Shown in pieces: positions 43,497-46,355 of a stretch of 64,000 bases of DNA. The notes under the pieces were generated by a model. That model ran no database searches. It saw nothing but the letters and a program-made list of their open reading frames with translations, and had not been told where the DNA came from. This stretch comes from Auanema rhodensis (Eukaryota > Animalia > Nematoda): NCBI GenBank assembly GCA_964057225.1, contig CAXKVF010000013.1, forward strand, positions 1 to 64,000, written 5' to 3'. The translations under genes and the position numbers were made by a program. Within the stretch, counting starts at the first letter, position 1. Each line of letters starts with the position of its first letter.

Positions 43497-45060
43497 ATTT
43501 GATTGATTCTGTCAGCGCTGTAGCTATCGTCAAGGATTAAGCCATGCCTGTGAAAAATTACTTGATTGATTCTGTCAGCGCTGTAGCTATCGTCAAGGAT
43601 TAAGCCATGCCTGGGAAAATTACTTGATTGATTCTGTCAGCGCTGTAGCTATCGTCAAGGATTAAGCCATGCCTGGGAAAAATTACTTGATTGATTCTGT
43701 CAGCGCTGTAGCTATTGTCAAGGATTAAGCCATGCCTGGGAAAAATTACTTGATTGATTCTGTCAGCGCTGTAGCTATCGTCAAGGATTAAGCCATGTCA
43801 GAGAAAAATTACTCGATTGATTCTGTCAGCGCTGTAGCTATCGTCAAGGATTAAGCCATGTCTGAGAATTATTACTCAATTGATTCTGTCAGCGCTGTAG
43901 CTATTGTCAAGGATTAAGCCATGTCAGAGAAAAATTACTCGATTGATTCTGTCAGCGCTGTAGCTATCGTCAAGGATTAAGCCATGTCTGAGAAAAATTA
44001 CTCGATTGATTCTGTCAGCGCTGTAGCTATCGTCAAGGATTAAGCCATGTCTGAGAAAAATCACTTGATTGATTCTGTCAGCGCTGTAGCTATCGTCAAG
44101 GATTAAGCCATGTCCGAGAAAAATTACTCGATTGATTCTGTCAGCGCTGTAGCTATCGTCAAGGATTAAGCCATGTCTGAGAAAAATTACTTGATTGATT
44201 CTGTCAGCGCTGTAGCTATCGTCAAGGATTAAGCCATGTCAGAGAAAAATTACTCGATTGATTCTGTCAGCGCTGTAGCTATCGTCAAGGATTAAGCCAT
44301 GCCTGGGAAAAATTACTTGATTGATTCTGTCAGCGCTGTAGCTATTGTCAAGGATTAAGCCATGCCTGGGAAAAATTACTTGATTGATTCTGTCAGCGCT
44401 GTAGCTATCGTCAAGGATTAAGCCATGTCAGAGAAAAATTACTCGATTGATTCTGTCAGCGCTGTAGCTATCGTCAAGGATTAAGCCATGTCTGAGAAAA
44501 ATCACTTGATTGATTCTGTCAGCGCTGTAGCTATCGTCAAGGATTAAGCCATGTCCGAGAAAAATTACTCGATTGATTCTGTCAGCGCTGTAGCTATCGT
44601 CAAGGATTAAGCCATGTCTGAGAAAAATTACTTGATTGATTCTGTCAGCGCTGTAGCTATCGTCAAGGATTAAGCCATGTCAGAGAAAAATTACTCGATT
44701 GATTCTGTCAGCGCTGTAGCTATCGTCAAGGATTAAGCCATGCCTGGGAAAAATTACTTGATTGATTCTGTCAGCGCTGTAGCTATTGTCAAGGATTAAG
44801 CCATGCCTGGGAAAAATTACTTGATTGATTCTGTCAGCGCTGTAGCTATCGTCAAGGATTAAGCCATGTCAGAGAAAAATTACTCGATTGATTCTGTCAG
44901 CGCTGTAGCTATCGTCAAGGATTAAGCCATGTCTGAGAAAAATTACTTGATTGATTCTGTCAGCGCTGTAGCTATCGTCAAGGATTAAGCCATGTCTGAG
45001 AAAAATTACTTGATTGATTCTGTCAGCGCTGTAGCTATCGTCAAGGATTAAGCCATGTCT
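43497..45060 (+). repeat. 63-bp 18S-5'-derived satellite, ~25 copies
   Basis: TACTTGATTGATTCTGTCAGCGCTGTAGCTATCGTCAAGGATTAAGCCATGTCTGAGAAAAAT in tandem. Confidence 0.95.
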
Positions 45061-45087
45061 GGGAATTTTTCTCAATTTTTAATTTTT

Positions 45088-46355
45088 ACGATAGCTACAG
45101 CGCTAACAGAATCAATCAAGTAATTTTTCCCAGGCATGGCTTAATCCTTCAGGATAGCTACAGCGCTGACAGAATCAATCAGGTAATTTTTTTCAGACAT
45201 GGCTTAATCCTTGACGATAGCTACAGCGCTGACAGAATCAATCAAGTAATTTTTCCCAGGCATGGCTTAATCTTTTACTTGAGCATACAGCGCTGACAGA
45301 ATCAATCAAGTAATTTTTCCCAGGCATGGCTTAATCTTTTACTTGAGCATACAGCGCTGACAGAATCAATCAAGTAATTTATCCCAGGCATGGCTTAATC
45401 CTTGACAATAGCTACAGCGCTGACAGAATCAATCAAGTAATTTTTCTCTGACATGGCTTAATCCTTGACGATAGCTACAGCGCTGACAGAATCAATCAAG
45501 TAATTTATCCCAGACATGGCTTAATCCTTGACGATAGCTACAGCGCTGACAGAATCAATCGAGTAATTTTTCTCAGACATGGCTTAATCCTTGACGATAG
45601 CTACAGCGCTGACAGAATCAATCGAGTAATTTTTCTCTGACATGGCTTAATCCTTGACGATAGCTACAGCGCTGACAGAATCAATCAAGTAATTTTTCTC
45701 AGACATGGCTTAATCCTTGACGATAGCTACAGCGCTGACAGAATCAATCAAGTAATTTTTCTCAGACATGGCTTAATCCTTGACGATAGCTACAGCGCTG
45801 ACAGAATCAATCAAGTAATTTTTCTCAGACATGGCTTAATCCTTGACGATAGCTACAGCGCTGACAGAATCAATCAAGTAATTTTTCTCAGACATGGCTT
45901 AATCTTTTACTTGAGCATACAGCGCTGACAGAATCAATCAAGTAATTTATCCCAGGCATGGCTTAATCCTTGACAATAGCTACAGCGCTGACAGAATCAA
46001 TCAAGTAATTTTTCTCTGACATGGCTTAATCCTTGACGATAGCTACAGCGCTGACAGAATCAATCAAGTAATTTATCCCAGACATGGCTTAATCCTTGAC
46101 GATAGCTACAGCGCTGACAGAATCAATCGAGTAATTTTTCTCAGACATGGCTTAATCCTTGACGATAGCTACAGCGCTGACAGAATCAATCGAGTAATTT
46201 TTCTCTGACATGGCTTAATCCTTGACGATAGCTACAGCGCTGACAGAATCAATCAAGTAATTTTTCTCAGACATGGCTTAATCCTTGACGATAGCTACAG
46301 CGCTGACAGAATCAATCGAGTAATTTTTCTCAGACATGGCTTAATCCTTGACGAT
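45088..46355 (-). repeat. 63-bp 18S-5'-derived satellite in inverted orientation, ~20 copies, three carrying the exact 18S core
   Basis: Reverse-complement units; the copies near 45261, 45325 and 45893 contain CTTTTACTTGAGCATACAGCGC, identical to 18S. Confidence 0.95.

What the first reader, a model, noticed from the sequence alone, without database searches (positions are those of the whole stretch)
43497..46355. The element amplifies a host rDNA motif (18S 5' end / IGS repeat) into ~50 copies
Seen: about 45 central copies plus 6 near the left end of a 63-bp unit matching the first ~50 nt of 18S. Both host IGS variants are represented: the exact 18S core (TGCTCAAGTAAAA) and the alternative core (GCT[A/T]TCGTCAAG, with A in the element and T in the IGS). 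The flanking blocks GATTGATTCTGTCAGCGCTGTA and GATTAAGCCATG are almost invariant. Inference: a bipartite binding site for an rDNA factor that the element mimics to gain nucleolar localisation, Pol I chromatin, replication or protection, or a source of rRNA-matching small RNAs. The diagnostic difference from the IGS suggests a long association with rDNA rather than a recent capture.
Basis: partly seen in the sequence, partly recalled or inferred. Interest (0 to 1): 0.85.

Follow-up and report, generated by a model that had tools for sequence, protein, structure and literature searches.

The report
rDNA transposon carrying amplified host spacer motif
A 22.6-kb mobile element sitting inside a ribosomal RNA gene, probably of a nematode, holds 51 copies of a short module from its host's own rDNA spacer (itself a copy of the start of the 18S gene), a second and more extreme case of what is known from the Pokey transposon of Daphnia.

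Summary
The window is a tandem rDNA array on the minus strand with an 8,394-bp unit. One 28S gene is split by a 22,558-bp insert (35159-57716) that has a 15-bp target-site duplication, imperfect inverted ends and repeated subterminal motifs. The insert holds 51 copies of a 63-bp unit: 6 near the left end, then 25 plus-strand and 20 minus-strand copies. The central array is therefore a head-to-head palindrome, not one array.

Each unit carries two blocks identical to the 18S 5' end, of 22 nt and 12 nt. Every host spacer holds 8 further copies of the same module, in the same two core forms. The units derive from spacer-type copies, because they share the spacer's 5' prefix and not the gene's. 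One core base separates all 47 alternative-core element copies from all 16 alternative-core host copies.

Within the arrays the 18S-identical blocks are nearly invariant (1 of 34 columns varies) while linker and core vary (15 of 29), which indicates constraint. Protein binding, small RNAs and a long association are untested. No transposase was recognised, no relative of the element was found, and only this one copy was seen. Closest precedent: Pokey's spacer-derived repeats.

The parts
35144..35158 (.). Left copy of the 15-bp target-site duplication in 28S (AAAACTAACCTGTCT)
   Evidence: Compared with the intact 28S of unit 1; sequence.
35159..57716 (.). The whole insert (22,558 bp) splitting one 28S gene
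   Evidence: 28S 3' piece at 34729-35158 and 5' piece from 57717. Ends TGCTGGTATCCA / TGCTTGTATCCA (reverse complement) agree at 11 of 12 bases; imperfect inverted ends of about 65 bp.
35164..35482 (+). Left subterminal repeats: ten GTATCC...GGATAC motifs, period 32 bp
   Evidence: 18 motif matches, all within the two ends of the insert; 0.05 expected by chance.
35492..35876 (-). Left array: 6 copies of the 63-bp unit
37346..37861 (+). Intact 171-aa ORF with an HExxH motif, weakly SprT-like (paralogue 1)
37937..40015 (.). 358-bp tandem repeat, 5.8 copies at 98% identity; not host-derived
42612..43504 (.). Unique part of the left palindrome arm
   Evidence: 98% complementary to 46372-47264. Contains a weak Srx-chemoreceptor-like ORF piece.
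43495..45065 (+). Central array, left half: 25 copies, all with the alternative core; higher-order period of 7 units
45066..45087 (.). Asymmetric centre of the palindrome (about 22 nt); the next unit is truncated inside its core
45088..46356 (-). Central array, right half: 20 copies, 3 of them with the 18S core; higher-order period of 9 units
46372..47264 (.). Unique part of the right palindrome arm
50935..51731 (+). SET-C-terminus-like gene remnant, copy 1. The reading frame is interrupted 3 times; short introns or frameshifts, not resolved.
   Evidence: (Pfam SET, E 0.009).
52028..52853 (+). SET-C-terminus-like gene remnant, copy 2. The reading frame is interrupted; not resolved.
54027..54530 (+). 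Intact 167-aa ORF with an HExxH motif (paralogue 2, 47% identical to paralogue 1)
56430..57716 (.). Right subterminal region: eight GTATC...GATAC motifs, a 196-bp repeat and the right inverted end
57717..57731 (.). Right copy of the 15-bp target-site duplication
2452..2503 (-). True 5' end of a host 18S gene, the source of the motif; repeated every 8,394 bp
3316..4560 (+). Host spacer block with seven copies of the module, antisense to the rRNA genes (4 with the 18S core, 3 with the alternative core); repeated in every unit
4769..4790 (-). Eighth spacer copy, in sense orientation, about 260 bp beyond the 28S 3' end

Best explanation
The 63-bp unit is a module copied from the host's own rDNA spacer subrepeats. 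Those subrepeats are themselves inverted copies of the first 47-90 nt of the 18S gene. Inside the insert the module sits in an element-specific 17-nt linker and has been expanded by unequal exchange into three arrays of 6, 25 and 20 copies. One inverted duplication turned the central array into a 4.7-kb palindrome. These steps are shown by the sequence.

The two 18S-identical blocks are held constant while linker and core drift, so the blocks are under constraint. This is shown as a pattern.

The mechanism I think most likely is inferred, not shown. The blocks are double-stranded DNA sites for a host spacer-binding factor, of the kind that marks Pol I terminators and replication-fork barriers, or spacer enhancers, in other organisms. 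The arrays lie upstream of ORFs that read away from them and are antisense to those ORFs. This is the same relative arrangement as the seven spacer copies upstream of the host rRNA transcription unit. Carried this way, the sites would shield the insert from Pol I read-through or give it the chromatin and transcription state of the spacer. That would let a large insert persist inside the rDNA.
For: Capture from the spacer:
- Element units and spacer copies share the prefix TTACT[T/C] before the 22-nt block. The gene copy has GAATCT there.
- Both spacer core forms are present in the element.
- No other host rDNA sequence occurs in the insert.

Amplification:
- The arms differ in higher-order period (7 and 9 units).
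- The unique arms are 98% alike and the arrays about 92-97%.

Constraint:
- 1 of 34 columns varies in the two blocks against 15 of 29 elsewhere (p 1.3e-5).
- The fixed A/T difference lies 4 nt from the 22-nt block. This argues against frequent conversion from host copies as the cause of the invariance.
- The same two blocks are exact in 8 of 8 (22 nt) and 7 of 8 (12 nt) spacer copies, although the core between them exists in two forms within one subrepeat family.
- A relative whose 18S is 85% identical has two sense copies of the first ~28 nt of its 18S in its spacer.

Orientation.

Precedent: Pokey carries 2-5 spacer-derived repeats upstream of its transposase. Its authors suggest enhancer, terminator or chromatin roles (PMC3849761).
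Against: - No binding, transcription or replication data exist.
- Only one copy of the element was seen, so constraint is judged from paralogous units of one array that share history through higher-order repeats. The number of independent mutations is therefore small.
- Spacing of the module is a regular 63 bp in the element but irregular (79-327 bp) in the host spacer.
- The insert is full of other tandem repeats (32, 174, 196 and 358 bp) that are not host-derived, so a general tendency to form arrays needs no function.
- The orientation argument for the two palindrome arms is one observation, not two, since the arms are copies of each other.
Confidence: 0.45

Rival explanations
1. Neutral by-product. 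A spacer fragment entered the insert by ectopic recombination with the neighbouring spacer and was expanded by replication slippage or unequal exchange, like the insert's other tandem repeats. The invariance of the blocks reflects occasional correction against the hundreds of identical host copies, which is possible only where homology exists.
For: The insert holds four other unrelated tandem-repeat families. Three units carry the 18S core inside element-type linkers, as expected from short conversion tracts from host copies. The Pokey authors considered the same null.
Against: Conversion tracts long enough to correct the 22-nt block would often carry the host T only 4 nt away, yet 47 of 47 alternative-core units keep A. 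Variation is strongly non-uniform along the unit.
Confidence: 0.25
2. Small-RNA source. A transcript through the 4.7-kb palindrome would fold into a long hairpin and be diced. Some products would match 18S nucleotides in the 22-nt block, and three units match about 50 contiguous nt. This would tie the element to the antisense ribosomal siRNA pathways known from Caenorhabditis elegans.
For: The arms are 98% complementary in the unique part and about 95% through the arrays. The host is probably a nematode.
Against: There are no expression data. Single units and dimers do not fold better than shuffled sequence (z -1.2 to +0.3). The left-end array is not part of any inverted repeat. Silencing of 18S would harm the host with no evident gain for the element.
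Confidence: 0.1
3. Recombination handle. The arrays give homology with every spacer of the rDNA array, or a local fork-stalling site. This would raise unequal exchange around the insert, so that the unit carrying it is copied or kept during rDNA copy-number turnover.
For: There are 51 copies of a module present 8 times in every spacer. The Pokey repeats are reported as highly recombinogenic and evolving in concert with the spacer.
Against: The homology blocks are only 22 and 12 nt, short for homologous exchange. The fixed A/T difference shows little exchange with the spacer. The 28S flanks already give much longer homology.
Confidence: 0.1
4. Assembly artefact. The palindrome or the copy numbers come from fold-back or chimeric long reads or from collapsed repeats.
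For: Only one assembled window was seen, and no reads are available. Inverted duplications are a known artefact of long-read data.
Against: The arms differ in copy number (25 against 20), in higher-order period (7 against 9 units) and in content (the 18S core occurs only in the right arm). The centre is asymmetric, with a truncated unit. This is not the pattern of a read folded back on itself.
Confidence: 0.05

Closest known systems
Pokey (piggyBac superfamily) of Daphnia, with its spacer-derived 'A repeats' (PMC3849761)
   Same: A DNA transposon resident at a specific 28S site. It carries tandem copies of a sequence from the host rDNA spacer in a non-coding part upstream of its genes. The repeats are recombinogenic and of proposed transcriptional, terminator or chromatin function.
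   Different: Pokey has a TTAA target and a piggyBac transposase, 2-5 copies of about 200 bp from a non-repetitive spacer region plus a 48-bp ITS2 piece, and repeats that evolve in concert with the spacer. Here there is a 15-bp duplication, no recognisable transposase, 51 copies of 63 bp, a palindromic array, a module that copies the 18S 5' end, and a fixed difference from the spacer.
Spacer repeats that bind Pol I factors in other organisms: Sal-box terminators / fork barriers bound by TTF-I in mouse, 60/81-bp enhancers in Xenopus (from general knowledge, not tested here)
   Same: A short module repeated several times between the 28S 3' end and the next promoter, mostly in one orientation, with sequence kept exact.
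   Different: No factor, termination or fork arrest is known for this module. No known terminator or enhancer is a copy of the 18S 5' end.
IS481EU DNA transposons of parabasalids (PMC10045372)
   Same: Terminal inverted repeats and target-site duplications of about 15 bp, an unusual length among eukaryotic DNA transposons.
   Different: IS481EU ends are TGT..ACA (TNT..AYA), whereas here they are TGC..GCA. IS481EU encodes an integrase-like DDE transposase, and none was seen here. IS481EU is known only from parabasalids, and this host looks like a nematode.
Foldback-type elements of Drosophila (from general knowledge)
   Same: Large elements whose ends are built from short tandem subrepeats, with few or no ORFs.
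   Different: They have a 9-bp duplication, no rDNA specificity and no host-derived arrays.
R2/R4-group non-LTR retrotransposons
   Same: They occupy the same niche, a highly conserved stretch of 28S. One sits in the neighbouring rDNA unit of this window.
   Different: The large insert has no reverse transcriptase, has inverted ends, and lies about 690 nt further 3' in the 28S.

Membership tests
Host spacer '18S 5'-end module' family | Exact 22-nt block plus GATTAAGCCATG, separated by a 12-13 nt core | tested here: met
   49 of 51 element copies have the 22-nt block exact and 50 of 51 carry the 12-nt block.
Host spacer '18S 5'-end module' family | Spacer-type 5' prefix TTACT[T/C] instead of the gene's GAATCT | tested here: met
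Host spacer '18S 5'-end module' family | Core identical to one of the two spacer forms | tested here: inconclusive
   3 units have the exact 18S/spacer core. 47 have the alternative core with one fixed difference (A for T).
Pokey / piggyBac | TTAA target-site duplication | tested here: not met
   The duplication is 15 bp (14 bp if the terminal A belongs to the element): AAAACTAACCTGTCT.
Pokey / piggyBac | piggyBac-type transposase ORF | tested here: not met
   No Pfam hit of that kind in the 29 ORF pieces of 56-186 aa scanned from the insert. Short exons could be missed.
Pokey / piggyBac | Carries tandem spacer-derived repeats while resident in 28S | tested here: met
   Comparison with PMC3849761.
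IS481EU | Target-site duplication of about 15 bp | tested here: met
   Family feature taken from PMC10045372.
IS481EU | Termini TGT..ACA (TNT..AYA) | tested here: not met
   The termini are TGC..GCA.
IS481EU | Integrase-like DDE transposase | tested here: not met
   None among the scanned ORF pieces. A non-autonomous copy would also lack it.
Maverick / Polinton | 5-6 bp duplication; protein-primed polymerase, integrase and capsid genes | tested here: not met
   15-bp duplication; none of these domains found.
Non-LTR R elements (for the large insert) | Reverse transcriptase ORF, no inverted ends | tested here: not met
   No RT in the insert; inverted ends present. The neighbouring 4.5-kb insert does meet it.
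Pol I terminator / fork-barrier or enhancer repeats | Repeated, mostly co-oriented sites in the spacer between the 28S 3' end and the promoter | tested here: met
   8 copies per spacer at 260-1,720 bp beyond the 28S end, 7 of them in one orientation.
Pol I terminator / fork-barrier or enhancer repeats | Bound by a specific factor; stops Pol I or forks, or stimulates the promoter | not testable with these tools
   Needs occupancy, nascent-RNA or replication-intermediate data from the organism.

The most novel reading that the evidence does not exclude
In this nematode lineage the first ~50 nt of the 18S gene double as a cis-acting spacer element, a factor-binding terminator, fork barrier or enhancer. 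An rDNA-resident transposon of an undescribed kind (15-bp duplication, no known transposase) has multiplied this element to 51 copies, including a convergent double array. With it the transposon controls Pol I read-through, fork passage or chromatin around itself. This would be molecular mimicry of rDNA control sequences by a mobile element.
Probability: 0.2. Interest if true: 0.8.

Novelty: new variant of a known kind. Interest (0 to 1): 0.55.

Why it matters
DNA transposons specialised for rDNA are very rare; the literature read here calls Pokey the only known one. Pokey's one odd trait is that it carries host spacer repeats of unknown role. A second, unrelated element doing the same in another phylum, at ten times the copy number and with measurable constraint on exactly the host-identical bases, argues that spacer mimicry is a recurrent way of living inside rDNA rather than an accident. 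It also singles out a 22+12-nt module, shared by gene, spacer and transposon, as a candidate rDNA control site in a group where Pol I promoters, terminators and fork barriers are, to my knowledge, poorly described. That makes the question testable with ordinary occupancy and transcript maps.

Tried and rejected
**Coding content of the insert**
- Pfam scans of 29 ORF pieces from the insert found no transposase, integrase, polymerase or RT. The only hints were weak: SET, Srx chemoreceptor and SprT-like.
- The word-based search with the 171-aa HExxH ORF found nothing.
- The full HMMER search of 1.8 billion representatives with the two paralogues gave one real homologue, in Auanema melissensis. 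Its 4.8-kb contig has no 18S-like repeat, no end motif and no rRNA. It therefore says nothing about related elements.
- The PDB sequence search found nothing. The AlphaFold model (pLDDT 69) gave no Foldseek match below E 0.01. The best weak matches, baculovirus nucleocapsid cap proteins and the human SPRTN protease domain, are not significant and I draw nothing from them.

**Looking for the host genome and for relatives**
- Exact-product look-ups for three window ORFs found no record, so the host genome is not in that collection.
- A scan of viral contigs for the 22-nt block gave 0 hits.

**RNA-level tests**
- A structured-RNA reading of the unit is rejected: folding is no better than for shuffles.
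- Rfam at relaxed threshold on the array gave only sub-threshold noise.

**Origin of the alternative core**
- I tested whether the alternative core is nearer to the 18S of other animals than the host's own core, using two tool-fetched comparators (L010, L011). The result is inconclusive, with 33-36 identical columns for all forms.

**A false lead**
- Three metagenome contigs break at the same 127-nt 28S word, ending 9 nt from the insertion site. This looked like a shared insertion. It is better explained by that word being 100% identical between species, which makes a graph vertex in mixed samples.

**Failed call**
- One Rfam call failed internally and was repeated with fewer loci.

- My first notebook entry gives a wrong right boundary (57705). 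Entry 3 corrects it to 57716.
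Full report
**Setting**

The window is a head-to-tail rDNA array on the minus strand with a unit of 8,394 bp. Rfam finds five 18S genes, five 5.8S genes and 28S genes. Two 28S genes are interrupted.
- One (21834-29815) carries a 4.5-kb insert with a 1,289-aa reverse-transcriptase ORF.
- The other is split into a 3' piece (34729-35158) and a 5' piece (from 57717) by 22,558 bp.

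The finding lies in the middle of this second insert.

**The insert is a mobile element of unclear class**

Compared with an intact 28S, 15 bp of target (AAAACTAACCTGTCT, 28S nt 3052-3066) are present on both sides. The two ends read TGCTGGTATCCA and, reverse-complemented, TGCTTGTATCCA, followed by an imperfect inverted repeat of about 65 bp.

A 16-nt motif of the form GTATCC...GGATAC occurs 10 times just inside the left end and 8 times inside the right end, and nowhere else in the window. This is the anatomy of a DNA transposon with subterminal binding sites.

I found no transposase, integrase, polymerase or reverse transcriptase in 29 ORF pieces of the insert scanned against Pfam. What it does carry:
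- Two intact paralogous ORFs with an HExxH motif, 47% identical and weakly SprT-like.
- Two paralogous remnants resembling the C-terminal end of SET domains, with interrupted reading frames.
- A weak Srx-chemoreceptor-like piece in each palindrome arm.
- Four tandem-repeat families that are not host-derived.

A duplication of about 15 bp is unusual. In the literature searched it is typical of IS481EU elements of parabasalids (PMC10045372). The ends here (TGC..GCA) and the lack of a DDE ORF do not fit that family.

**The host**

The host is probably a rhabditid nematode.
- The only homologue of the HExxH ORFs among 1.8 billion representatives is in Auanema melissensis.
- The closest named homologues of the neighbouring retrotransposon protein are from Haemonchus, Trichostrongylus, Caenorhabditis japonica, Meloidogyne and Bursaphelenchus, with Rotaria rotifers among them.

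**The observation**

The 63-bp unit forms three arrays:

| Array | Coordinates | Copies | Strand |
|---|---|---|---|
| Left end | 35492-35876 | 6 | minus |
| Centre, left half | 43495-45065 | 25 | plus |
| Centre, right half | 45088-46356 | 20 | minus |

The central array is therefore two blocks lying head to head. Together with 893 nt of unique sequence on each side, which is 98% complementary, they form a palindrome of about 4.7 kb.

The arms are not mirror images.
- They differ in copy number.
- Their higher-order periods differ (7 units on the left, 9 on the right).
- Their content differs.
- The centre is asymmetric, with one unit cut inside its core.

This speaks against a fold-back assembly artefact and for a real inverted duplication followed by separate unequal exchanges.

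**Relation to the host**

The host 18S begins ...AATCT, then the 22-nt block GATTGATTCTGTCAGCGCTGTA, then TGCTCAAGTAAAA, then GATTAAGCCATG.

The 22-nt block occurs 89 times in the window against 0 expected:
- 51 times in the insert;
- at each 18S 5' end;
- 8 times in every spacer, seven on the plus strand (antisense to the rRNA genes, 520-1,720 bp beyond the 28S end) and one on the minus strand about 260 bp beyond it.

Some spacer copies of the 18S type continue 80-90 nt into 18S sequence. Others have the alternative core GCTTTCGTCAAG and stop at GATTAAGCCATGC.

All spacer copies and all element units are preceded by TTACT[T/C], whereas the gene has GAATCT. The units therefore descend from spacer-type copies, not directly from the gene. 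Nothing else in the insert is similar to host rDNA.

Of the 51 element units, 47 have the alternative core, always with A where all 16 alternative-core host copies in the window have T. Three have the exact 18S core inside element-type linkers, and one is truncated.

**Constraint**

Among 45 full alternative-core units, the two 18S-identical blocks (34 columns) show one singleton change. The remaining 29 columns show 15 variable columns, 8 of them shared by several units. Fisher p is 1.3e-5 for any variation and 1.1e-3 for shared variants.

Correction by gene conversion from the many host copies could in principle keep the blocks constant. Tracts covering the 22-nt block would, however, often carry the host T that lies 4 nt away, and none of the 47 units has it. 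I therefore read the pattern as selection on the blocks, with rare short conversions explaining the three 18S-core units.

The caveat is that the units share history through higher-order repeats, and only one copy of the element is available.

**Is the spacer module special?**

A metagenome scan with the 22-nt block returned eight rDNA contigs of relatives. Their 18S is only about 85% identical to the host's, but their first 50 nt of 18S are identical. The block is thus simply the clade's 18S 5' end.
- One of these species has two spacer copies of the first ~28 nt, in sense orientation, 184 bp apart.
- Contigs with 1.4-1.6 kb of upstream sequence (L003, L006) have no such copy.
- A more distant rDNA contig with 3.1 kb of spacer (L010) has no copy of its own 18S start.

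Spacer copies of the 18S 5' end therefore recur in this clade but are not universal, and they differ in extent and orientation. In both species the copy begins within a few bases of the mature 18S 5' end. I cannot explain this.

**Mechanism**

Shown: capture from the spacer, amplification, inverted duplication, and uneven variation.

Inferred: the blocks are binding sites for a spacer factor, and the element uses them as the spacer does. The arrays lie upstream of ORFs that read away from them, antisense to them:
- the left array precedes plus-strand ORFs;
- the right arm precedes plus-strand ORFs;
- the left arm mirrors the right arm.

The seven spacer copies lie upstream of the minus-strand rRNA unit in the same way.

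The position of the spacer copies, just beyond the 28S end and mostly co-oriented, recalls Pol I terminators and fork barriers of other organisms (general knowledge, not tested). The Pokey authors list enhancer, terminator and chromatin roles for their repeats.

A structured-RNA role is not supported. A hairpin small-RNA role is possible because of the palindrome, but is untested.

**Comparison and novelty**

Pokey of Daphnia is the clear precedent. It is a 28S-resident DNA transposon with 2-5 spacer-derived repeats upstream of its transposase.

This case differs in phylum, element class, copy number (51), palindromic arrangement, the nature of the module (a copy of the 18S 5' end), and a fixed difference from the spacer in place of concerted evolution. 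I rate it a new variant of a known kind.

One fixed base can be a founder effect.

**Limits**

- One window, one element copy and no reads.
- No genome-wide count, because the host genome was not found in the look-up collection.
- No related element was found.

Noticed in passing
window 22941-27427 (within the 28S at 21834-29815): A 4.5-kb non-LTR retrotransposon with an intact 1,289-aa ORF (23243-27112, minus strand, same sense as the rRNA). It has Pfam RVT_1, and solved R2 proteins match at E 6e-20. It is flanked by a 17-bp duplication of 28S about 45 bp 3' of the canonical R2 site, with a run of C (plus strand) at its 5' junction. From memory this resembles the R4 site of Ascaris; not tested.
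   Followed up: partly
window about 27475-27476 (same 28S gene): At the canonical R2 cleavage site of this interrupted 28S, 7 nt of the intact sequence are replaced by 2 nt. This is a separate small lesion about 30 nt from the retrotransposon's 5' junction, possibly a scar of an earlier event.
   Followed up: no
L002 7435-7640; L004 1403-1608; L009 78-99: A metagenomic relative (18S 85% identical to the host's) has two spacer copies of the first ~28 nt of its 18S, in sense orientation, 184 bp apart. Like the host's copies they start within about 3 nt of the mature 18S 5' end.
   Followed up: partly
window 37346-37861 and 54027-54530: Two intact paralogous HExxH ORFs (47% identical) inside the insert. 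They are weakly SprT-like (Pfam E 0.11 for the window ORF; 0.0013 for the Auanema homologue). Only one homologue exists among 1.8 billion representative proteins, so this is a very narrowly distributed family.
   Followed up: partly
window 50935-51731 and 52028-52853: Two tandem paralogous gene remnants whose first piece resembles the end of a SET domain with a Cys-rich tail (Pfam SET E 0.009). The frames are interrupted, and introns against frameshifts is not resolved. The pieces were not joined.
   Followed up: partly
window 43207-43485 (-) and 46391-46669 (+): The ORF piece next to the array in each palindrome arm hits the nematode Srx chemoreceptor family weakly (E 0.007). This suggests captured host gene fragments in the insert.
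   Followed up: no
window 36314-36777 vs 55285-55677; 42117-42527 vs 55026-54617: Further internal paralogy: a lysine-rich ORF region is present twice in the same orientation, and a 410-bp segment is present twice in inverted orientation at 90% identity. The insert is a mosaic of duplicated modules in different order.
   Followed up: partly
window 2815-3260 (and every 8,394 bp): About 14 copies of a 29-bp repeat lie between the last spacer copy of the 18S module and the 18S gene. That leaves only about 310 bp of non-repetitive sequence upstream of 18S. The promoter and external transcribed spacer must be very short or lie within the repeats.
   Followed up: no
host 28S nt 2949-3075 (window 5454-5580 in unit 1): This 127-nt stretch, which contains the insert's target site, is 100% identical between the host and three metagenomic relatives whose 18S is only 85% identical. 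Their contigs break exactly at this word, most likely because it is a shared vertex in mixed-species assembly graphs.
   Followed up: yes
window 37937-40015: A 358-bp tandem repeat (5.8 copies, 98% identity) inside the insert, with no similarity to host rDNA. Its function and origin are unknown.
   Followed up: no
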